This document shows positions 3,321 to 35,900 of a stretch of DNA of 64,000 nucleotides, in pieces; positions within the stretch are counted from its first letter, which is position 1, and every line of letters starts with the position of its first letter. A program made the position numbers and the translations under genes. The notes under the pieces were generated by a model. It searched no databases, was not told the origin of the DNA, and saw only the letters and a list, made by a program, of their open reading frames with translations. The stretch lies in sequence record LR745206.1. The stretch is one strand, 5' to 3'.

Positions 3321-3337
3321 ATTTTTATTTTATTTTG

Positions 3338-3411
<74 letters not shown>

Positions 3412-17613: not shown

Positions 17614-17925
17614 TTTTTATTTTTTATTTGTTTTTGTTTACCTACTCTGTTAGGGATTTTCAGTTATCTCCCACTAAAATCTTTTTTATCCCCATAGAAA
17701 TATGGAGGTTAAGATTTAGTAAATTAAAAAAGGTGATATAAAATTATTTATTCATGCGTTGAATGATATATATATTACGATGGAAATATTTAAAAGGTAG
17801 CTTTTTTGACGAAAAATCAAAAAAAATTTTACCGTCTTCGACAGGTCTCAAAAAATTTTTAAACTCAGACATCAGAAATAATCACACAAATTAGAATACA
17901 AATAAATATAAATAATATATAGATA

Positions 17926-25767: not shown

Positions 25768-27966
25768 ATGAAAAAGTTATTATCATTATTATTCATATTA
25801 CTATTAACAACTGTATCTAACGCTCAATTCTGTCCTGATTTAGGACCTGATCAATTTCTACCTTGTGGTGTTGGTACAACTACACTAACTGCTAATCTAA
25901 GCTCCTGTTCACCTGGTGTGAACCCAAATGAAACCACGACATATGGTGTAACACCTATTCCTTATGTTGCTCAAGTTAACACAGGAACTAATGTTTCATT
26001 GAGTGATGATTCACAAGCAGGTCCATTTCCAATTGGATTTAATTTTTGTTTTTTCGGTAATACATATACACAATTTTATATAGGATCAAATGGTTGGATA
26101 TCATTTAGTGCTGGGATGCCAACTACATTTACATCAGCAACTATACCAAGTGTTGGTCCAACAATACCTAAGAATTGTATAATGGGTCCTTGGCAAGATT
26201 GGCATCCTGGTTTAGGTGGTCAGATTAAATATCAAACTCAAGGAACAGCTCCTTGTAGAACATTAATAGTTAGTTGGATAAACGTACCAATGTATAGTTG
26301 TACCGCAACAACAGGAACATTCCATATTGTAATACACGAATCAACAAATTTAATAGAAAATTTTATAGAGAATAAACAATTTTGTGCTTGGGCAGGTGGT
26401 ACGGCAGTTCAAGGAATACACAATCTACCAGGAACAGTAGCTGTGGTTGTGCCTGGTAGGAATTCAACGGTATGGACTGCTGTTAATGAAGCTTATTCTT
26501 ATACACCAAATGGTGCTGTTGTTAATCCAATACTTACTTGGTATCAAGTAGGTATACCTGGATCAATAGGAACAGGACCAACTATTGTTGTTACTCCACC
26601 ACCAGGTGGTGCTCAATACACTTGCCATTTGGAATATCCTATTTGTAATGCTGGTTGGAGTGCTTGTAATCCTTCTGCAGGACCTGGTCCTGATACAGTA
26701 TTGGTTGTACCAACACCATCACTAGCTCCTCCTTTAATGACATTTACTGATCCATTATGTAATGGTAGTTGTGATGGTACAGCTACTATAACTCCTATTG
26801 TTCCTAGTGCTGGATATACCTATCTTTGGTCAACTGGTGGATTAACACCAACAATAACAGGATTGTGTGCTGGTATTTATACGGTTACTGCTGATGATGG
26901 TAATGGGTGTATAACAACCGGTACTGTTACCTTAACTGATCCACCGTTATTAATAGCTCCTCCGATAGTATCACCACCTATTGTTTGTTATCAATCAAAT
27001 AGTGAAATCTATTCAGTAACTCCTGTTGGTACTGGTATAACATATACTTGGGTAACTTCCGGTATAATAAATTCTGGACAAGGAACTGATGTTGTTGATT
27101 TAGATTTATCAACACTTATTGGTGGAATAACACCTAACGCAGTTGGTGTTTTCATTACTGATATTAATGGTTGTGTTAGTGATACAGTATTTGTTGATGT
27201 TAATGTGTTAAACATAACAACAACTATTGATCCAATAGGACCTTTTTGTTCAAATGATCCTTGTGTTGTCTTAGTTGGTAGTCCTGTTGGTGGTGTTTTC
27301 AGTGGTGTTGGTGTTAGTGGTATGAATTTTTGTCCTGATTCTGGTAGTAGTGATATAACATATACATATACACAAAGTGGTTGTACTTTCGATACGACTA
27401 TATCTGTGATATCAAATCAACAACCATTAATACTTTCTATATTACCATCAAGTCAATATATTACGGTGTGTGAAAATGAAACACTATCTGTTACATACAC
27501 AACACAAACAACTTTACCGGGAACCAATGAATGGCTATTTGATGGTCAAGTGTACACAAGTAATGGTTTGGATGTTATATGGGACACGCCAGGAGCTTAT
27601 AATATCGAGGTTATTCATTATAGTAATGGTTGTCCATCAGATCCTTATAACGTGTTAATTGTTGTATCAGAGTGTCCTTCATTGATATATTATATACCAA
27701 ATGCTTTTACACCAGATGGTGATGGTCATAATCAATTATGGTTTCCTGTCTTTACAAAAGGATTTGATCCATATGACTTCCACTTATCTATCTTCAATAG
27801 ATGGGGTGAAACTATATGGGAATCTTATGATGTTAATGGTAAGTGGGATGGTACTTATGGTGGTCAACTAGTTCCACAAGGTGTTTATGTGTGGGTAGTT
27901 GAATTTGGTGATTCGTATAACGATTCCAGACACATTGATTATGGGTCTGTTAATGTGATTAGATAG
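25768..27966 (+). CDS. secreted adhesin-like protein with T9SS type B C-terminal domain
   Basis: Signal peptide; nidogen-like LSDDSQAGPFPIGFNFCFFG; SprB-like repeat; YIPNAFTPDGDGHN..IFNRWGE. Confidence 0.9.
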   Translation: MKKLLSLLFILLLTTVSNAQFCPDLGPDQFLPCGVGTTTLTANLSSCSPGVNPNETTTYGVTPIPYVAQVNTGTNVSLSDDSQAGPFPIGFNFCFFGNTYTQFYIGSNGWISFSAGMPTTFTSATIPSVGPTIPKNCIMGPWQDWHPGLGGQIKYQTQGTAPCRTLIVSWINVPMYSCTATTGTFHIVIHESTNLIENFIENKQFCAWAGGTAVQGIHNLPGTVAVVVPGRNSTVWTAVNEAYSYTPNGAVVNPILTWYQVGIPGSIGTGPTIVVTPPPGGAQYTCHLEYPICNAGWSACNPSAGPGPDTVLVVPTPSLAPPLMTFTDPLCNGSCDGTATITPIVPSAGYTYLWSTGGLTPTITGLCAGIYTVTADDGNGCITTGTVTLTDPPLLIAPPIVSPPIVCYQSNSEIYSVTPVGTGITYTWVTSGIINSGQGTDVVDLDLSTLIGGITPNAVGVFITDINGCVSDTVFVDVNVLNITTTIDPIGPFCSNDPCVVLVGSPVGGVFSGVGVSGMNFCPDSGSSDITYTYTQSGCTFDTTISVISNQQPLILSILPSSQYITVCENETLSVTYTTQTTLPGTNEWLFDGQVYTSNGLDVIWDTPGAYNIEVIHYSNGCPSDPYNVLIVVSECPSLIYYIPNAFTPDGDGHNQLWFPVFTKGFDPYDFHLSIFNRWGETIWESYDVNGKWDGTYGGQLVPQGVYVWVVEFGDSYNDSRHIDYGSVNVIR

Positions 27967-29984: not shown

Positions 29985-30012
29985 AAAAAAGTCCTGTCAT
30001 AAACAGGACTTT
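29985..30012 (-). terminator. fusA intrinsic terminator
   Basis: AAAGTCCTGT/ACAGGACTTT stem plus U-tract right after the fusA stop. Confidence 0.85.
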
Positions 30013-30016
30013 AATT

Positions 30017-31972
30017 TTAAACTTTCTCGTAATGTGAGAAGACCATATTATAATCACCTCTACCAGAAGTTATTGTTCTTAGGTTAGTCATATAACCAAA
30101 CATCCTAGATATAGGAACGGTGCCGGTGATATATTTCAATTCACCCTTATTATCCATTTCGGATATAATACCTTTCCTCTTACTAAAATCACTAACAACT
30201 CCACCAACATAATCTTCTGGTGTTATGATATTAGTATTCATAATAGGCTCCAATAAACAAGGATCACATTTTTCCAAAGCTGATCTAAATGCTAACTGAG
30301 CTACCATTTCAAATGAGTAAGCATCAGAGTCAACATTATGATAACTACCATCAAGAAGTCTAACTTTAAGATTTTGAACAGGGTAACCAAAAGCACCATT
30401 ACTCAAACAATTCTTAAATCCTTTTTCAATAGCTGGTATATACTCTTTTGGAATATTACCACCAGTAACTTCATTGATGAATTGTAAACCTTCTACATCA
30501 TCATCAGCAGGTCCAATCTCAATAGAGATATCGGCAAATTTACCCTTACCACCAGTTTGTTTACTCAAAACCTCTTTGTGTAAAACAGTTTTCTGTAATC
30601 TTTCCTTATGAGCAACCTTAGGGACACCCTTAGTAACCTCAACACCAAAATCGGTTTGTAATCTACTTATAATAACATCAAGGTGTAACTCACCCATACC
30701 ACTAAGAATAGTCTGACCAGCTTCATTACTCTTAACTATAAGAGTTGGATCCTCTTCCGTTAGCTTAGATAAAGCAACTGATATCTTATCATAATCAACT
30801 TGAGTTTTTGGTTCGATAGCTATTGATATAACTGGGTCAGGAAAATTCATAGACATCAACTCCACAGGATTATCAACATCACAAATTGTTTGACCAGTGT
30901 TAGTATTTTTCAGACCAACAACCGTAACTATATCACCAGCTACCGCAACATCAACAGCTTTCTTATTTTGAGCATGCATCTGGAATATTCTAGATATTCT
31001 TTCATGTTCATTCGTATAAGGATTCAAAACAACATCACCTGGTTTTAATTGACCGGAGTATATTCTTATGAACGTAAGTTTTCCATGTTTATCAGTCATA
31101 ATCTTAAATACCAAAGCACTAAATGGATCCTCTACTCTATTACCTTTATCTTCTGGACTAGGTAATATATTAATAATAGTATCCAATAAAGTTTGAACTC
31201 CTTTGTTCTTAAAGGCAGAGCCACAAAGAACCGGGATAGCTAAGTTATTAAGGCAAATATCATGTAGAGCCTCATTAATACCATCAACAGTAACTTCATC
31301 ATTCAAATAAGACATCATAAACTTATCATTAAGATCAGATATCTGCTCCAACATAATACTTCTATATTCTTTAGAAATATCAATCATATGATCTGGTATA
31401 GTTTCGATGGAAACAACTTCACCCATCTCACCTGATTGTTTTATAGCAACCATATTTATTAGGTCAATAATACCTTCGAAGTCTGTCTCAGCACCAATTG
31501 GTAACTGTATAGCAATCGGATTAGCATTAAGTCTTTCTCTTATTTGTTTACACACCGATAAGAAGTCAGAACCAACTCTATCCATTTTATTAACAAACGC
31601 AACACGACTCACACCATACTCATTGGCTAATCTCCAATTCGTTTCTGATTGAGGTTCGACACCATCAACAGCAGAGAAAAGGAATACTAAACCATCAAGA
31701 ACTCTTAATGATCTATTTACCTCAACTGTAAAGTCAACGTGACCTGGGGTATCAATGATATTAATTTTATTATTGTTCCAATAGCAAGTTGTAGCAGCCG
31801 AAGTAATTGTTATACCACGGTCTCTTTCTTGAACCATATGGTCCATAGTTGTATTACCATCATGTACTTCACCAATTTTGTGATTTACACCTGTGTAATA
31901 AAGAATTCTTTCGGTTAGGGTTGTTTTACCTGAGTCGATGTGGGCGACGATGCCTATATTTCTTGTTTTCAT
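30017..31972 (-). CDS. fusA: elongation factor G
   Basis: [42 protein letters not shown]; ATG at 31972. Confidence 0.97.
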
Positions 31973-32059
31973 AATTTTCAAATTTTTATTTAAACCAACA
32001 TCTTCCGAAGCCTCTCTTATGAGAAGTTGTTAATTTTGTTAATAAAGTTTAGGGAATAA

Positions 32060-32094
32060 AAATTTAGTCAATCACCAAGGATTTGGGTGATTGA
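32060..32094 (-). terminator. terminator-like hairpin in the fusA leader
   Basis: TCAATCACC/GGTGATTGA stem 1 nt after the leader stop, followed by AAATTTTT. Confidence 0.6.
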
Positions 32095-32095
32095 A

Positions 32096-32131
32096 TTATA
32101 AAACAGCTCGTATGATAATTACGTTTTTCAT
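32096..32131 (-). CDS. putative fusA leader peptide MKNVIIIRAVL
   Basis: Hand-translated; between TATATTTG (32176-32183) and the hairpin. Confidence 0.65.
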   Translation of the reverse strand: MKNVIIIRAVL

Positions 32132-32194
32132 TATTCGTTATATATTACTTTCGTAAATAGTTTATTTTCCGATTACAAATATAAGAAAATAAAC

Positions 32195-33613
32195 TTAAAT
32201 CCTGTCAAATAAAATTTGTTTTTTACAACCTTCGATAACATTTAAAAATTCATTAGTCTTTTCAACGCCAAATAATGGTATGTATAATGTATTAACAACC
32301 AATAATAGTGAATATAAATTAGATAACTCAACTTCATAATTTTCGGAAGCCCAAGGTTTATTATCATTTATATATTTGTTTGCAAATTTAACCAATTCAT
32401 TAGTCTTACATAAAGCATCTTTAACTTTAAAGTTATCCCATAAATCTACAACAGAATCTTTATAACTATTTATTGTATCATTGAATGAATCTTCTGGTAA
32501 ACAATTTGGTCTGCGACCACATTTTATATCAATTAAATGTAATACTCTTGATACTAAATTTCCCCAATCATTTACAATTTCAGAATTCCATATTTGTTTA
32601 AGTTCATCATCATCCCAAGATGAATTAGCATAAGTATTTAATCTAAGAGCATAATACCTAACTGGGTATAATCCATACTTATCTAATTGATCAATTGGAT
32701 CTACAACATTACCAATTGATTTGGAAATCTTACGACCATCTTTATCGAGAATAGTACCATGAACTAGTAATTTATCGGTGTGTTTTATATTCTCAGCTTC
32801 TAGAAAGGATTGAAATATAACTCCCTGGAACCTTATATTATCTGGTCCACAGAGTTGTATAACTCTATTCCAGTTGAAATTATCTGTTAGATACCCAGCA
32901 GCGAAGATGTAATTGAGTAAAGCATCAAACCAGACATAAATAACTTGGTCTTCGTCATTTGGTACAGAAACACCCCAAGGGCAATTCTTTCTTACTCTAG
33001 ATATAGATATATCATCAGAATCTATAATTAGATTCCTTAATTCGTTTATTTTTGATATTGGTTCTAAGAACGTTGGATTATTTTCAATCCATTTTAGTAG
33101 TGAGTCTCTGTACTTAGATAATCTAAAGAAATAATTTTCCTCATCTACTATTTTTATTTCGGTTGTTGTATGATCTTGGCATTTACCATCCACCAATTCG
33201 GAATCTTTTTTAGCTGATTCACATCCAACACAATATTTACCCTTATATGAGCCTTTGTATATATCACCGTTGTTTAAGAATTTTGTCCAAATGGATTGCA
33301 CTTTCTCGTGGTGAGAGATGTCAGAGGTTTTATAAAAGGAATCATAGTCTATGTTAAATTTAACACAAAAGTCCTTCCAAGACGTTGTTAGGTTGTTTAT
33401 ATGTTGTTCTGGTGTTATACCAAGCTCTTGAGATTTCTCCCAGACTTTCAAACCATGTTCATCCAATCCAATGTTAAAATGAACATCATTTTTAATTTTA
33501 AACCATTTTGAAAGAGCATCTCCCAATATAAATTCGAAAGCGTGTCCAATATGTGGAACTGAGTTCACATATGGTAATGTTGTTGTTATAAATATATTTT
33601 CTGCGATTTCTAT
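32195..33613 (-). CDS. metG: methionyl-tRNA synthetase lacking the C-terminal OB domain; probable AUA start
   Basis: FITTTLPYVNSVPHIGH, YCVGCE Zn knuckle, YVWFDAL, KISKS; no in-frame ATG before the first motif. Confidence 0.9.
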   Translation of the reverse strand: MEIAENIFITTTLPYVNSVPHIGHAFEFILGDALSKWFKIKNDVHFNIGLDEHGLKVWEKSQELGITPEQHINNLTTSWKDFCVKFNIDYDSFYKTSDISHHEKVQSIWTKFLNNGDIYKGSYKGKYCVGCESAKKDSELVDGKCQDHTTTEIKIVDEENYFFRLSKYRDSLLKWIENNPTFLEPISKINELRNLIIDSDDISISRVRKNCPWGVSVPNDEDQVIYVWFDALLNYIFAAGYLTDNFNWNRVIQLCGPDNIRFQGVIFQSFLEAENIKHTDKLLVHGTILDKDGRKISKSIGNVVDPIDQLDKYGLYPVRYYALRLNTYANSSWDDDELKQIWNSEIVNDWGNLVSRVLHLIDIKCGRRPNCLPEDSFNDTINSYKDSVVDLWDNFKVKDALCKTNELVKFANKYINDNKPWASENYEVELSNLYSLLLVVNTLYIPLFGVEKTNEFLNVIEGCKKQILFDRI

Positions 33614-34377: not shown

Positions 34378-35709
34378 TTATATTTCATAAATAATATTAA
34401 ATATTGGTTCCAAGTCCTCTATGATATACTTTAATGTAATTGATGTTGGTTTTGTTTTTGATGATTCTATCCACTCATCACAGAATAGATTCCAGAAAAA
34501 CTTATATAATAAATCATTAGCGATGCTAAGATCCATATTATCAAAAGCATTTAATATATCAGATTTATATTGTGACCAAATCTCTATTAATTTATCATCC
34601 TCTCCTATCCATTCGTTATCAATTTGTATTTGAATGAACTTCTTAGCGTTCTTAAACTTATTACTCATCTTCCAACCCATTCTCATCTTAGACTCATCTA
34701 TCTTAGTGTCCATACCCAATGTACCAGATGTTGACCAACTTCTTATACCATTAGCACCATATCTATCTATTAAAGGTTTTGGTGGTGTTGCATTACCACT
34801 CGACTTACTAAACTTATCACCGTTACCATCAAGTGTATGTCCTGTTATCATAATACTTTTCCAAGGTATTTGGTTATTTAAAAAGTAGGACATAGCTATT
34901 GTATAGAATGCCCAAGTTCTAATAATATCATGTGATTGAAATCTCATATCAAATATAGGACACTCTAAAGATGGTATTCCGGTGTGAGCTGACCAAGCTA
35001 ATTGTGGTGTTAGTGCTGATATAAACCAAGTATCGAACGTGGATGTTTCACCAGGAATCATAATTCCGAAATTTCTCTCTCTTGATATTGACCAGTCCCA
35101 TTTGATTTGTTCTAACCAATCATCTGCTCTTTTTTTGTGAGAGAAGGGTTTCCAATCTATCTTGTCTATCATTTCTTTTATTTTTGGTAAATGATCTTTT
35201 ATATTTATAAACCAGCCTTCACCAGTTTTTATTAAAGGAATCTCACCAGTTCTTTCGATTATCCCATCATCATTTAGTTCTGATTGTGATATAGATGTCT
35301 TTAATTTTTCTGACCATAAATATTCAGTTGTTGCTTTATAAGCAATTCCTCTTTCTTTTAATTTCTCAAATGCCATATAAGCAATATTAATTGATTGGTC
35401 ATCATAGGTATAATATCTTTGTTCACCAAAATTAATACCTGATAGATTAAATGTGTCATGATAATCTTTTGACTTGTTTATTGAGAAATCAATAATATTT
35501 TGTGTACCCTTTATTCCTTTGTTTGATGCAAGTTTACCAGTTGGTATTCCGTTGTTGTCAAAACAGAATGGATAAATTAAATTTTTACCAAGATATTTTT
35601 GATATCTAGCAATTATATCTCCTTGTGTATAAGAGAATATATGACCTATGTGTAGGTTACCACTTATTGTAGGTGGTGGTGTGTCGATTAAATAATTGTT
35701 TGTTTTCAT
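34378..35709 (-). CDS. valS: minimal valyl-tRNA synthetase (443 aa; CP1 editing region and C-terminal coil missing)
   Basis: DTPPPTISGNLHIGH, DWSISR, FDTWF, DIIRTW, KFSKS; Val-rich leader supports Val specificity. Confidence 0.9.
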   Translation of the reverse strand: MKTNNYLIDTPPPTISGNLHIGHIFSYTQGDIIARYQKYLGKNLIYPFCFDNNGIPTGKLASNKGIKGTQNIIDFSINKSKDYHDTFNLSGINFGEQRYYTYDDQSINIAYMAFEKLKERGIAYKATTEYLWSEKLKTSISQSELNDDGIIERTGEIPLIKTGEGWFINIKDHLPKIKEMIDKIDWKPFSHKKRADDWLEQIKWDWSISRERNFGIMIPGETSTFDTWFISALTPQLAWSAHTGIPSLECPIFDMRFQSHDIIRTWAFYTIAMSYFLNNQIPWKSIMITGHTLDGNGDKFSKSSGNATPPKPLIDRYGANGIRSWSTSGTLGMDTKIDESKMRMGWKMSNKFKNAKKFIQIQIDNEWIGEDDKLIEIWSQYKSDILNAFDNMDLSIANDLLYKFFWNLFCDEWIESSKTKPTSITLKYIIEDLEPIFNIIYEI

Positions 35710-35731
35710 GTTTATAATTTTATAATTTTTT

Positions 35732-35852
35732 AAAATAAAAAACCCGACATATCTTTTGATATGTCGGGTCGAGTGAGTTATATAATAGCTATTCCAACAT
35801 ATCAGACTGATACATTGACAACCACTAAGTTATTTAAATTTATTGTTTTCAT
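35732..35852 (-). promoter_or_regulatory. Val-sensing transcription attenuator of valS
   Basis: Leader ORF, alternative 1:2, 2:3 and 3:4 pairings; 12-bp terminator ACCCGACATATC/GATATGTCGGGT plus U-tract. Confidence 0.9.
35802..35852 (-). CDS. valS leader peptide MKTINLNNLVVVNVSV
   Basis: 5 Val in the last 7 codons (GTG GTT GTC GTA GTC); promoter TATATTTG at 35869-35876. Confidence 0.88.
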   Translation of the reverse strand: MKTINLNNLVVVNVSV

Positions 35853-35900
35853 ATTCTTTATATATCTACAAATATAATTAAAGTTTTTCACTTTTCAAAA

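What the first reader, a model, noticed from the sequence alone, without database searches (positions are those of the whole stretch)
31975..32183. Leader peptide abutting a terminator upstream of EF-G
Seen: promoter 32176-32183, then MKNVIIIRAVL* (Ile codons ATT ATC ATA then CGA), a 9-bp hairpin starting 1 nt after TAA, a U-rich tract, and a second hairpin (~31995-32030) before fusA. No upstream antiterminator strand is evident. Inference: a ribosome lingering at the leader end would mask the terminator's 5' arm. Since EF-G drives translocation and recycling, fusA would be induced when EF-G activity is low. Ile/Val/Leu sensing is an alternative.
Basis: partly seen in the sequence, partly recalled or inferred. 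Interest (0 to 1): 0.65.

Follow-up and report, generated by a model that had tools for sequence, protein, structure and literature searches.

The report
Conserved uORF–pseudoknot leader of phage EF-G
The EF-G gene of one of the largest known phages is preceded by a conserved 11-codon mini-gene that ends one base before a hairpin, and the hairpin's loop pairs with a second hairpin downstream.

Summary
The window is the first 64 kb of LR745206.1, a 634,780-bp uncultured "Mahaphage" predicted to infect Bacteroidetes. The "fusA" here is a phage gene for a short EF-G (651 aa).

In 24 recovered copies (20 distinct sequences aligned, about 14 lineages, EF-G 62-97% identical) the leader is conserved although the flanking genes differ:
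- The uORF is always 11 codons, M-x-x-x-[I/R]-x-I-R-A-V-[L/V/S]-stop. Arg uses four synonymous codons, Ala two, and all three stop codons occur.
- Hairpin H1 always starts 1 nt after the stop. It has compensatory pairs and an invariant AAAUCC loop.
- New here: the H1 loop pairs with N'GGCUUU in the apical loop of a second, co-varying hairpin (H2). This forms a kissing-loop pseudoknot about 35 nt before the EF-G start.

H1 is not a convincing intrinsic terminator. Its loop is 8-9 nt and conserved, only 1-5 U lie in the 8 nt after the stem, and the U-run is absent in several lineages. The phage's real terminators look different.

The Ile run is not conserved, so Ile/Val/Leu sensing is rejected.

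Best reading: an arrest-type uORF whose ribosome must melt H1 and break the pseudoknot, which changes EF-G expression. The output step and any EF-G feedback are untested. There is no Rfam match and no description in the literature searched.

The parts
32176..32183 (-). TATATTTG, a Bacteroidota-type -7 promoter box (TAnnTTTG), 45 nt before the uORF ATG
   Evidence: One search shows the sequence. One search shows the motif alone is weak evidence (137 matches against 103 expected in the window). One search shows a TAnnTTTG box upstream of the uORF in nearly all relatives, 4-45 nt from the start codon.
32139..32147 (-). TAATATATA, a motif linked to gene starts in this phage, 7 nt before the uORF ATG
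   Evidence: 22 copies against 9.5 +/- 3.3 expected; 21 of 22 copies lie 4-34 nt upstream of a same-strand ORF start, and 11 of them lie at 4-7 nt. The uORF therefore has the start context of ordinary phage genes.
32096..32131 (-). uORF of 11 codons plus TAA, encoding MKNVIIIRAVL*. The core I7-R8-A9-V10 is invariant.
   Evidence: All 24 copies have 11 codons. There are 14 peptide variants. Arg uses CGA, CGC, CGG and AGG; Ala uses GCT and GCA. Stops TAA, TGA and TAG all occur (TAG in L158). The uORF-ATG to EF-G-ATG distance is 153-162 nt.
32068..32094 (-). Hairpin H1: 5' arm 32094-32086, loop 32085-32077 (CAAAUCCUU), 3' arm 32076-32068. It starts 1 nt after the stop, which is +11 from the first base of the Val10 codon.
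   Evidence: 98.8% of cells paired and four pairs with changes on both sides. L158 carries three further compensatory pairs.: -9.7 to -13.2 kcal/mol in all lineages.
32037..32067 (-).
   Evidence: the window has 0 G and 10 C in 48 nt, against a strand background of G 16% and C 13%. All lineages have 0-4 G and 5-14 C; the U-run is not conserved.
31992..32036 (-). Hairpin H2: 5' strand 32036-32023, 17-nt apical loop 32022-32006, 3' strand 32005-31992. A competing mini-hairpin lies at 32026-32021 paired with 32016-32011.
   Evidence: One search gives the fold with the kissing strand held unpaired; cognate against non-cognate stem energy is -7.3 against -4.4 kcal/mol, permutation p = 5e-5. One search shows helix substitutions at equivalent positions: CUGAA:UUCAG, CCG:CGG, CUAAA:UUUGG and UCUAC:GUAGG.
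32006..32013 (-). AGGCUUCG, the 3' strand of the kissing-loop pseudoknot. It pairs with the H1 loop at 32085-32078.
   Evidence: Column pair 57:127 is CG 7, UA 6, AU 2, UG 2, with none unpaired. Column pair 50:134 is CG 9, AU 4. Sliding the partner drops pairing from 93.7% to 49.7% or less; cognate against non-cognate loop-loop energy, p = 0.002. L157 lacks the one unpaired loop U.
30017..31972 (-). Phage EF-G gene, 651 aa, ATG at 31972
   Evidence: TIGR00484, 855.7 bits against a 659.4 cutoff; it belongs to a clade of about 80 short EF-Gs (645-659 aa); 58% identity to a Bacteroidia EF-G, with the P-loop and catalytic His kept and several small deletions.
29988..30012 (-). Canonical intrinsic terminator directly after the EF-G stop. 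It closes a one-gene transcription unit.
   Evidence: 11-bp stem, 3-nt loop and an abutting T-run.

Best explanation
This is the cis-regulatory leader of a huge-phage EF-G gene. A promoter drives a short mRNA leader in which an 11-codon uORF is translated. The last residues of the peptide (I-R-A-V-x) are under amino-acid-level selection, as in ribosome-arrest or regulatory nascent peptides.

The stop codon lies 1 nt before hairpin H1. When Val10 is in the P site, the base of H1 sits at about +11, the mRNA entrance of the ribosome. When the stop codon is in the A site, most of H1's 5' arm lies inside the ribosome.

With no ribosome present, the H1 loop (AAAUCCN) pairs with N'GGCUUU in the apical loop of hairpin H2, which closes about 20 nt before the EF-G start. 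This makes a compact kissing-loop pseudoknot. A ribosome dwelling at the end of the uORF must melt H1 and so break the kissing complex, which refolds the 120-nt spacer. The dwell time there therefore sets how much EF-G is made.

The output is most likely translation initiation at the Shine-Dalgarno-less, A-rich EF-G start. A Rho-type effect on the G-poor linker is the main alternative.

**Shown:** conservation of the uORF, the spacing, H1, H2 and the loop-loop pairing; one copy per genome; exclusive linkage to this EF-G clade.

**Inferred:** that the uORF is translated, that the peptide slows the ribosome, the direction of regulation, and the output step.
For: **uORF**
- 24 of 24 copies have 11 codons.
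- I7, R8, A9 and V10 are invariant, while Arg uses four codons from two codon families and Ala uses two.
- Residues 2-6 and 11 vary, and all three stop codons are used.
- Its ATG has the same TAATATATA context as ordinary genes of the phage.

**Linkage to EF-G**
- The leader stays with EF-G while both neighbouring genes change.
- There is one copy per genome in LR745206, LR756502 and a 185-kb IMG/VR contig.

**RNA structure**
- H1 covaries.
- The loop-loop pairing has four pair types at one position, a second covarying position, and collapses in the slide controls. Cognate pairs beat non-cognate pairs with p = 0.002. A natural deletion removes the single unpaired loop base.
- H2 stems co-evolve (p = 5e-5).

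**Geometry**
- H1 starts at +11 from the first base of the Val10 codon in every lineage.

**Gene unit**
- EF-G has its own terminator and so forms a one-gene unit.

**Published context**
- SecM stalls with I162-R163-A164-G165 at the peptidyl-transferase centre, in the same register as I7-R8-A9-V10. It also slows translocation so that more EF-G sampling is needed (PMC4737659).
- The EF-G paralogues TetM and TetQ are controlled by leader-peptide attenuators (PMC5418344).
Against: - There is no expression data: no RNA run holds the locus. Translation of the uORF, stalling and any regulation are unproven.
- The peptide lacks the Pro that SecM and RAPP arrests need.
- Helices that would hide the EF-G start (uORF end with the AUG region; post-H1 U-stretch with the pre-start A-stretch) appear in the window's subgroup. 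They are not supported across lineages (p = 0.40 and 0.06). How the pseudoknot reaches the start site is therefore unknown.
- The loop-loop duplex is thermodynamically modest: -1.8 to -6.6 kcal/mol, and -2.9 in the window.
- I7 is always ATA and V10 always GTT. An RNA-level constraint on these codons cannot be excluded.
Confidence: 0.5

Rival explanations
1. H1 plus the following U-rich stretch is an intrinsic terminator. A ribosome lingering at the leader's stop masks its 5' arm and allows read-through into EF-G.
For: In the window's subgroup a U5 run follows H1. The ribosome geometry is correct. A distant Mahaphage, LR756504, has a different uORF followed by a canonical terminator in front of its EF-G. 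The same window also holds a classical leader-terminator attenuator in front of its ValRS-like gene. Attenuation by termination is therefore used in these phages.
Against: The U-run starts 6 nt after the stem. Only 1-5 U lie in the first 8 nt, and lineages L128, L130, L135, L131 and L144 have no U-run. The loop is 8-9 nt and sequence-invariant, which is unlike a terminator. The scan does not flag H1. The phage's real terminators have 11-13-bp stems, 3-4-nt loops and abutting U-runs. The conserved loop has another partner.
Confidence: 0.1
2. Rho-dependent attenuation of the tnaC or speFL type. The G-poor, C-containing linker after H1 is a Rho loading site. A ribosome held at the end of the uORF blocks Rho, and fast release lets Rho stop transcription before or within EF-G. 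The pseudoknot would tune exposure of the linker.
For: The linker has 0-4 G and 5-14 C in every lineage, although its sequence diverges. The window has 0 G in 48 nt against a 16% background. The uORF has conserved C-terminal residues next to the stop, as in TnaC and SpeFL (general knowledge).
Against: The linker is short (40-50 nt) and mostly A/U. The conserved H1/H2 structure has no counterpart in tna or speF. G depletion could simply keep the linker unpaired. Nothing is known about Rho in the unknown host.
Confidence: 0.15
3. The H1-H2 pseudoknot is an operator for a trans-acting factor: a phage or host protein, EF-G itself, a ribosomal protein or a small ligand. The uORF would be secondary, for example serving only to clear or load the site.
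For: The loop sequence is invariant, and a conserved unpaired U/C position lies inside the kissing helix. Pseudoknotted operators are known for phage T4 gene 32 and for several ribosomal-protein mRNAs (general knowledge).
Against: No Rfam family matches, even at E up to 10. This model does not explain amino-acid-level conservation of IRAV or the fixed 1-nt spacing from stop to hairpin. EF-G is not known to bind mRNA operators.
Confidence: 0.12
4. Amino-acid supply sensing (Ile/Val/Leu), as in classical leader-peptide attenuators.
For: The window's own peptide reads V-I-I-I-R-A-V-L.
Against: Positions 4-6 are Q, N, Y, R, H, L, V, S or P in other lineages, and only one Ile and one Val are fixed. 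There is no terminator/antiterminator pair. The genuine Val-codon leader in the same window looks quite different.
Confidence: 0.03

Closest known systems
SecM-secA arrest-peptide control (E. coli) and RAPP-type arrest peptides
   Same: A nascent peptide with an I-R-A core near the peptidyl-transferase centre: SecM I162-R163-A164-G165 against I7-R8-A9-V10 here, in the same register if Val10 is in the P site. In SecM the arrested ribosome opens a downstream mRNA structure to switch on the next gene. SecM also slows translocation and raises EF-G sampling (PMC4737659, PMC10951299, PMC10951233).
   Different: SecM is 170 aa and needs upstream residues and Pro166 in the A site. RAPP peptides need Pro-Pro. 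The peptide here is 11 aa, has no Pro, has a variable last residue and ends in a stop. No secretion link exists. Arrest is not demonstrated.
tet(M) (Tn916) transcription attenuator and tetQ (Bacteroides CTnDOT) translational attenuator
   Same: Short leader ORFs control translational GTPases of the EF-G family by sensing ribosome behaviour. tetQ acts in Bacteroidetes, the predicted host phylum (PMC5418344, PMC3809561).
   Different: Those leaders respond to tetracycline and use terminators (tetM) or hairpins that hide the ribosome-binding site (tetQ, 3-codon leader). No conserved peptide core or loop-loop pseudoknot is reported for them. Here the regulated gene is a phage EF-G.
tnaC and speFL leader peptides (Rho-dependent attenuation)
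   Same: Short leader peptides with conserved C-terminal residues that hold the ribosome at or next to the stop codon. A G-poor untranslated spacer precedes the regulated gene.
   Different: Those peptides sense tryptophan or ornithine, depend on a particular release factor, and have no hairpin abutting the stop. Here all three stop codons occur and a pseudoknot follows.
ermC and cat-86 translational attenuators
   Same: A ribosome paused near the end of a short leader ORF melts the adjacent hairpin arm and refolds the mRNA.
   Different: In those cases the melted hairpin directly hides the ribosome-binding site, and the pause is drug-induced. Here the hairpin is about 95 nt from the start and acts, if at all, through a loop-loop contact.
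Classical amino-acid attenuators (trp, pheST). The Val-codon leader of the ValRS-like gene in this same window (35876-35709) has this layout.
   Same: A promoter, a short leader ORF, RNA structure and then a translation gene.
   Different: Those have runs of cognate codons, a 1:2 / 2:3 / 3:4 alternative fold and a canonical terminator. The EF-G leader has none of these.
-1 frameshift-stimulating pseudoknots
   Same: A pseudoknotted hairpin placed about 11-12 nt downstream of the P-site codon, where it resists EF-G-driven translocation.
   Different: There is no slippery site and no downstream frame to enter. The uORF-to-EF-G distance is not a fixed multiple of three.

Membership tests
Intrinsic (Rho-independent) terminator | Stable G+C-containing stem | tested here: met
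   The stem has 8-9 bp, 4-6 of them G-C pairs, and a free energy of -9.7 to -13.2 kcal/mol.
Intrinsic (Rho-independent) terminator | Short loop whose sequence is free to vary | tested here: not met
   The loop is 8-9 nt with an invariant AAAUCC. The phage's own terminators have 3-4-nt loops.
Intrinsic (Rho-independent) terminator | U-run directly abutting the stem | tested here: not met
   Only 1-5 U lie in the first 8 nt. In the window the run starts after CUAAA, and several lineages have none. The scan does not flag H1.
Classical amino-acid leader-peptide attenuator | Conserved run of codons for the sensed amino acid | tested here: not met
   The Ile run exists only in some lineages, and positions 4-6 vary freely.
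Classical amino-acid leader-peptide attenuator | Mutually exclusive antiterminator and terminator helices | tested here: not met
   No conserved alternative partner for either H1 arm was found. The ValRS-like leader in the same window does show this layout.
Ribosome arrest / regulatory nascent peptide | Short ORF just upstream of the regulated gene, with amino-acid-level conservation concentrated at its C-terminal end | tested here: met
   IRAV is invariant with synonymous codon variation, and the N-terminal part varies.
Ribosome arrest / regulatory nascent peptide | An mRNA structure that a ribosome at the arrest site would disrupt | tested here: met
   H1 starts at +11 from the first base of the Val10 codon and 1 nt after the stop, in all copies.
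Ribosome arrest / regulatory nascent peptide | Demonstrated translation arrest (toeprint, peptidyl-tRNA accumulation) | not testable with these tools
   No RNA or ribosome-profiling data hold this locus.
SecM / RAPP-like arrest motif | R-A-[G/P]-P, with Pro-tRNA in the A site | tested here: not met
   The motif is R-A-V-[L/V/S]-stop. No copy has a Pro.
Kissing-loop / H-type pseudoknot RNA | Complementarity between a hairpin loop and a distal segment, kept by covariation | tested here: met
   Column pair 57:127 is CG, UA, AU or UG with none unpaired. Column pair 50:134 is CG or AU. Slide controls collapse. Cognate against non-cognate gives p = 0.002.
Any Rfam 15 family | Covariance-model match | tested here: not met
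   There is no hit at gathering scores. At E up to 10 only implausible hits far below threshold appear.
Elongation factor G (TIGR00484) | Score above the curated cutoff, with all five domains | tested here: met
   The score is 855.7 bits against 659.4. The Pfam GTP_EFTU, D2, EFG_III, EFG_IV and EFG_C domains are found in relatives. The P-loop and the catalytic His are present.

The most novel reading that the evidence does not exclude
The uORF-pseudoknot is a direct sensor of EF-G activity. The invariant IRAV peptide and the pseudoknot at the mRNA entrance make the last translocations of the uORF, or the EF-G/RRF-dependent removal of the post-termination ribosome, unusually dependent on EF-G. 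Ribosome dwell time at that spot would then report EF-G availability. It would let the phage top up its own EF-G when the host factor is limiting, damaged by a defence system or inhibited.
Probability: 0.2. Interest if true: 0.85.

Novelty: new variant of a known kind. Interest (0 to 1): 0.62.

Why it matters
Huge phages are known to carry translation factors (PMC7162821), but how they control them is unknown. This would be a defined, conserved cis-regulatory element for a phage-encoded EF-G. It can be tested in Bacteroidota hosts, which lack Shine-Dalgarno-led initiation.

It combines a very short peptide with an invariant core and a loop-loop pseudoknot. No curated RNA family and none of the known arrest peptides compared here has this layout. 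If the peptide stalls ribosomes, it adds a Pro-free I-R-A-V arrest motif. If the stall depends on EF-G, it would be a feedback sensor for translocation or recycling, for which I know of no precedent.

The same window also holds a textbook Val-codon attenuator in front of a phage ValRS-like gene. This phage therefore appears to control at least two of its translation genes through leader ORFs.

Tried and rejected
- **Peptide-pattern scan of IMG/VR with the EF-G protein:** no relatives found.
- **First DNA pattern (loop plus stem ends, 14 specified bases):** about 120 chance hits, and only L001 was real. A corrected hairpin-only pattern gave one chance hit in a GC-rich coding region plus the known L143.
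- **Rfam at gathering and at permissive thresholds:** nothing relevant.
- **Sequencing runs:** only DNA metagenomes hold the locus and no RNA runs do.
- **Whole-genome handle for the window:** none is held. The phage records were searched through locus handles instead.
- **Helices hiding the EF-G start** (uORF end with the AUG region; post-H1 U-stretch with the pre-start A-stretch): predicted in the window's subgroup. They are no better in cognate than in non-cognate pairs across lineages (p = 0.40 and 0.06).
- **A second AAUCC-like copy just after H1 as a decoy partner for the H2 loop:** not supported (p = 0.93; shuffle control 0.14).
- **Pairing of the linker with the 5' part of the uORF:** p = 0.09.
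- **Recoding, hopping or fusion of the uORF into EF-G:** rejected. The distance is 153-162 nt and not a fixed multiple of three, no take-off/landing codon pair exists, and no slippery site is conserved (sequence inspection).
- **H1 as the terminator of the upstream MetRS-like gene:** rejected. The upstream gene differs or lies on the other strand in relatives, while H1 stays with EF-G.
- **Further copies of the element:** none in the window, the four Mahaphage genomes or the IMG/VR contig. The next best hits score 21.4 bits or less.
- **RNAalifold on MAFFT alignments:** recovers only H1, because indels misalign H2. H2 therefore rests on the energy test and on inspection.
- **Not used:** the costly exhaustive protein search, structure prediction and complex prediction were not needed. 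No N stretches were met.
Full report
**What the window is.** The region 30017-33568 is 100% identical, at identical coordinates, to LR745206.1, an uncultured phage of 634,780 bp. This is one of the four largest curated genomes of the "Mahaphage" clade. That clade is predicted to replicate in Bacteroidetes and is reported to encode elongation factors G, Tu and Ts (PMC7162821). The window fits a phage: 27-31% G+C and dense small ORFs, mostly on the minus strand. The "fusA" of the finding is therefore a phage gene. It encodes a 651-aa protein that scores 855.7 bits on the EF-G equivalog TIGR00484, cutoff 659.4. The protein is 58% identical to a Bacteroidia EF-G. It keeps the P-loop and the catalytic His and has several small deletions. 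The gene upstream is a truncated MetRS-like ORF at 33568-32195.

**Checking the observation.**
- TATATTTG at 32183-32176.
- The ORF MKNVIIIRAVL* at 32131-32096.
- One spacer base, then a 9-bp hairpin (32094-32086 with 32076-32068, 9-nt loop, -11.1 kcal/mol).
- A U-rich stretch, although it starts only after CUAAA.
- A second stem-loop around 32036-31992.
- The EF-G ATG at 31972.

The -7 box alone is weak evidence, with 137 matches against 103 expected in the window. The simple terminator scan does not flag the hairpin.

**Relatives.**
- The related megaphage LR756502.1 keeps an 11-codon ORF and the hairpin in front of its EF-G, although its upstream gene lies on the other strand.
- A word-based protein search shows that the window's EF-G belongs to a clade of about 80 short EF-Gs (645-659 aa) at 62-97% identity. 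Ordinary Bacteroidota EF-Gs (about 700 aa) reach only 57-59%.
- Contigs were fetched for ten of these proteins, and DNA was returned for nine.
- One exact-pattern scan each of metagenome, viral and genome collections was run.
- Together these gave 24 copies of the leader, and 20 distinct sequences in about 14 lineages were aligned.
- Both flanking genes differ among the loci, while a gap of about 210-255 nt in front of EF-G persists.
- A covariance model of the uORF plus H1 finds exactly one copy in each of LR745206, LR756502 and a 185-kb IMG/VR contig.
- The model finds none in the more distant LR756504 and LR756501, whose EF-Gs are 708 and 675 aa.

**The uORF.**
- All copies have 11 sense codons, starting with ATG or GTG.
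- There are 14 peptide variants.
- Residues 7-10 are always I-R-A-V.
- Arg is encoded by CGA, CGC, CGG or AGG, and Ala by GCT or GCA.
- Residue 11 is L, V or S.
- The stop is TAA, TGA or TAG.
- Residues 2-6 vary widely.
- The uORF-ATG to EF-G-ATG distance is 153-162 nt.

This is the pattern of selection on an encoded peptide whose C-terminal end matters. In the window the ATG lies 7 nt after a TAATATATA motif. That motif is enriched (22 against 9.5 expected) and sits 4-7 nt or 22-29 nt before many ORF starts in this phage. The uORF thus has the start context of ordinary phage genes. In several lineages a TAnnTTTG box lies only 4-9 nt before the start, which suggests a very short or absent 5' UTR (inference).

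**Hairpin H1.** H1 begins 1 nt after the stop in every copy. On the 18-sequence alignment it is 98.8% paired. Four of its nine pairs change on both sides, and the slide and shuffle controls collapse. L158 adds three more compensatory pairs. The loop carries an invariant AAAUCC.

**H1 is unlike a terminator.**
- The loop is long and conserved.
- The first 8 nt after the stem hold only 1-5 U.
- Several lineages have no U-run.
- The phage's canonical terminators have 11-13-bp stems, 3-4-nt loops and abutting U-runs. One lies directly after the EF-G stop (30012-29988) and another before the ValRS-like gene (35770-35741).

**The loop has a partner.** The H1 loop 5'-(C/A)AAAUCCN pairs with 5'-N'GGCUUU(G/U) about 55 nt downstream, at window 32013-32006.
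- The N:N' position is C-G in 7 sequences, U-A in 6, A-U in 2 and U-G in 2, and it is never unpaired.
- The first loop base covaries as C-G (9) or A-U (4).
- An internal U opposite C is conserved as a mismatch.
- Sliding the partner by 1-3 columns drops pairing from 93.7% to 49.7% or less.
- Cognate loop-strand duplexes are more stable than non-cognate ones (permutation p = 0.002).
- In L157 the mismatched loop U is simply deleted, as expected for an unpaired base.

**Hairpin H2.** The partner strand lies in the apical part of a second hairpin, H2.
- The stem sequences of H2 differ between lineages but co-evolve. Cognate stem energy is -7.3 kcal/mol against -4.4 for non-cognate pairs (p = 5e-5).
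- Visible substitutions at equivalent positions include CUGAA:UUCAG, CCG:CGG, CUAAA:UUUGG and UCUAC:GUAGG.
- In the window H2 is 32036-32023 with 32005-31992, and it has a 17-nt loop.
- RNAalifold on MAFFT alignments finds only H1, because indels misalign H2. H2 therefore rests on the energy test and on inspection.

**The linker.** The 40-50 nt between H1 and H2 are G-poor and relatively C-rich in all lineages, although the sequence diverges. The window has 0 G and 10 C in 48 nt.

**What does not hold up.**
- In the window's subgroup the minimum-energy fold also pairs the uORF end with the EF-G start region. It further pairs the post-H1 U-stretch with the A-stretch just before the start.
- Across lineages these helices are no better in cognate than in non-cognate combinations (p = 0.40 and 0.06). 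I do not claim them as family features.
- A second AAUCC-like sequence after H1, considered as a decoy partner, is not supported either.
- No Rfam family matches.
- No RNA sequencing run holds the locus.

**How it most likely works.** The geometry comes from the sequence. The first base pair of H1 is at +11 from the first base of the Val10 codon.

From established knowledge of the bacterial ribosome, the mRNA entrance and helicase site lie about 11-13 nt downstream of the first P-site base. This is my own knowledge and was not tested here. It follows that H1 stands at the entrance exactly when I-R-A-V occupies the peptidyl-transferase end of the tunnel. The next two translocations must open it. 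With the stop in the A site, most of the 5' arm lies inside the ribosome.

A ribosome at the end of the uORF and the H1-H2 kissing complex are therefore mutually exclusive. I infer that ribosome dwell time there sets the fold of the spacer and so EF-G output.

The invariant I-R-A-V is in the same register as SecM I162-R163-A164-G165. In SecM, I162 and R163 contact the peptidyl-transferase centre, and the arrest also prolongs the rotated state so that more EF-G sampling is needed (PMC4737659). This is a lead, not a test. The Pro that SecM and RAPP peptides need is absent here (PMC10951233).

The output step is open. I favour translation initiation, because H2 closes about 20 nt before an A-rich start without a Shine-Dalgarno sequence. 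Rho loading on the G-poor linker is the main alternative. Intrinsic termination is unlikely.

**Comparison with known systems.**
- The closest precedents by gene family are the leader-peptide attenuators of the EF-G paralogues TetM (transcriptional) and TetQ (translational, in Bacteroides) (PMC5418344).
- The closest by mechanism are SecM-secA, ermC and cat-86, and tnaC and speFL.
- None combines an 11-codon peptide with an invariant core, a stop-abutting hairpin and a loop-loop pseudoknot.
- The literature searches found no description of a leader for phage EF-G.
- I file it as a new variant of leader-peptide (ribosome-sensing) regulation, not as a member of any named family.

**Context noticed.**
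- The same window holds a textbook attenuator in front of the ValRS-like gene. Its uORF, MKTINLNNLVVVNVSV*, has five Val among its last seven codons. The fold is a 1:2 / 2:3 / 3:4 arrangement with a z-score of -5.9 and a canonical terminator.
- The distant Mahaphage LR756504 has an unrelated uORF plus a canonical terminator in front of its EF-G.
- Leader-ORF control of translation genes therefore seems to recur in these phages. This makes a regulatory role for the EF-G uORF more plausible. It also shows what a real terminator-based attenuator looks like here.

**Verdict.** It is partly wrong about the terminator, the Ile/Val/Leu alternative and the cellular fusA. The EF-G-feedback idea remains an attractive, untested possibility.

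Noticed in passing
window 35709-35876 (minus strand): In front of the 443-aa ValRS-like gene lies TATATTTG, then a 16-codon uORF MKTINLNNLVVVNVSV* with five Val among its last seven codons. A strongly structured leader follows (z = -5.9), in which the Val-codon strand pairs with a segment that could instead pair with the terminator's 5' arm. A canonical terminator sits at 35770-35741, before the ATG at 35709. This looks like a classical Val-sensing leader-peptide attenuator of a phage aaRS gene.
   Followed up: partly
window 34378-35709 and 32195-33568 (minus strand): The aaRS-like genes are much shorter than cellular ones. The ValRS-like protein has 443 aa against a profile of 801-863 positions, and its residues around 220-420 match profile positions around 454-662. 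An internal block, probably the editing domain, therefore seems to be missing. The MetRS-like protein has 457 aa and covers profile positions 16-448 of 648.
   Followed up: no
window, 22 sites (for example 4337, 6622, 17913, 22994, 25338, 37404, 47765, 32147): TAATATATA is enriched, with 22 copies against 9.5 expected. In 21 of 22 cases it lies upstream of a same-strand ORF start, at either 4-7 nt or 22-29 nt. It is a candidate phage promoter or translation-start motif.
   Followed up: partly
L002 (LR756504.1) 2735-2955: This distant Mahaphage has a 708-aa EF-G preceded by a TAnnTTTG box, an unrelated 23-codon uORF and a canonical terminator hairpin with a U-run 25 nt before the ATG. A uORF segment (ACAGGGU) could pair with the terminator's 5' arm. 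It may be an independent terminator-based attenuator of EF-G. Only one sequence is available, so conservation is unchecked.
   Followed up: partly
proteins P0064 and P0075: Members of the short-EF-G clade are recorded on contigs of 1,254,637 and 1,086,864 bp. These are larger than any described phage genome, so they may be cellular genomes, misassemblies or larger phages. Only an 11.9-kb contig could be fetched for P0064, and it carries the leader.
   Followed up: partly
window 25768-27966 (+); L124 4492-6687; L131 4541-6238: Large proteins with type IX secretion C-terminal sorting domains (TIGR04131, CHU_C, Por_Secre_tail) are encoded near the EF-G gene in several of these phage contigs. This fits a Bacteroidota host.
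   Followed up: no
window 17639-17673 (-) and 3337-3411 (-): There is a DUF805b RNA motif hit (38.2 bits, gathering score 35.6) and a tRNA-Arg(TCT) gene.
   Followed up: no
L144-L146 (genome contigs): Three contigs binned into Bacteroidota or Sediminibacterium MAGs carry the phage-type leader and the short EF-G. They are probably phage contigs mis-binned into bacterial genomes.
   Followed up: no
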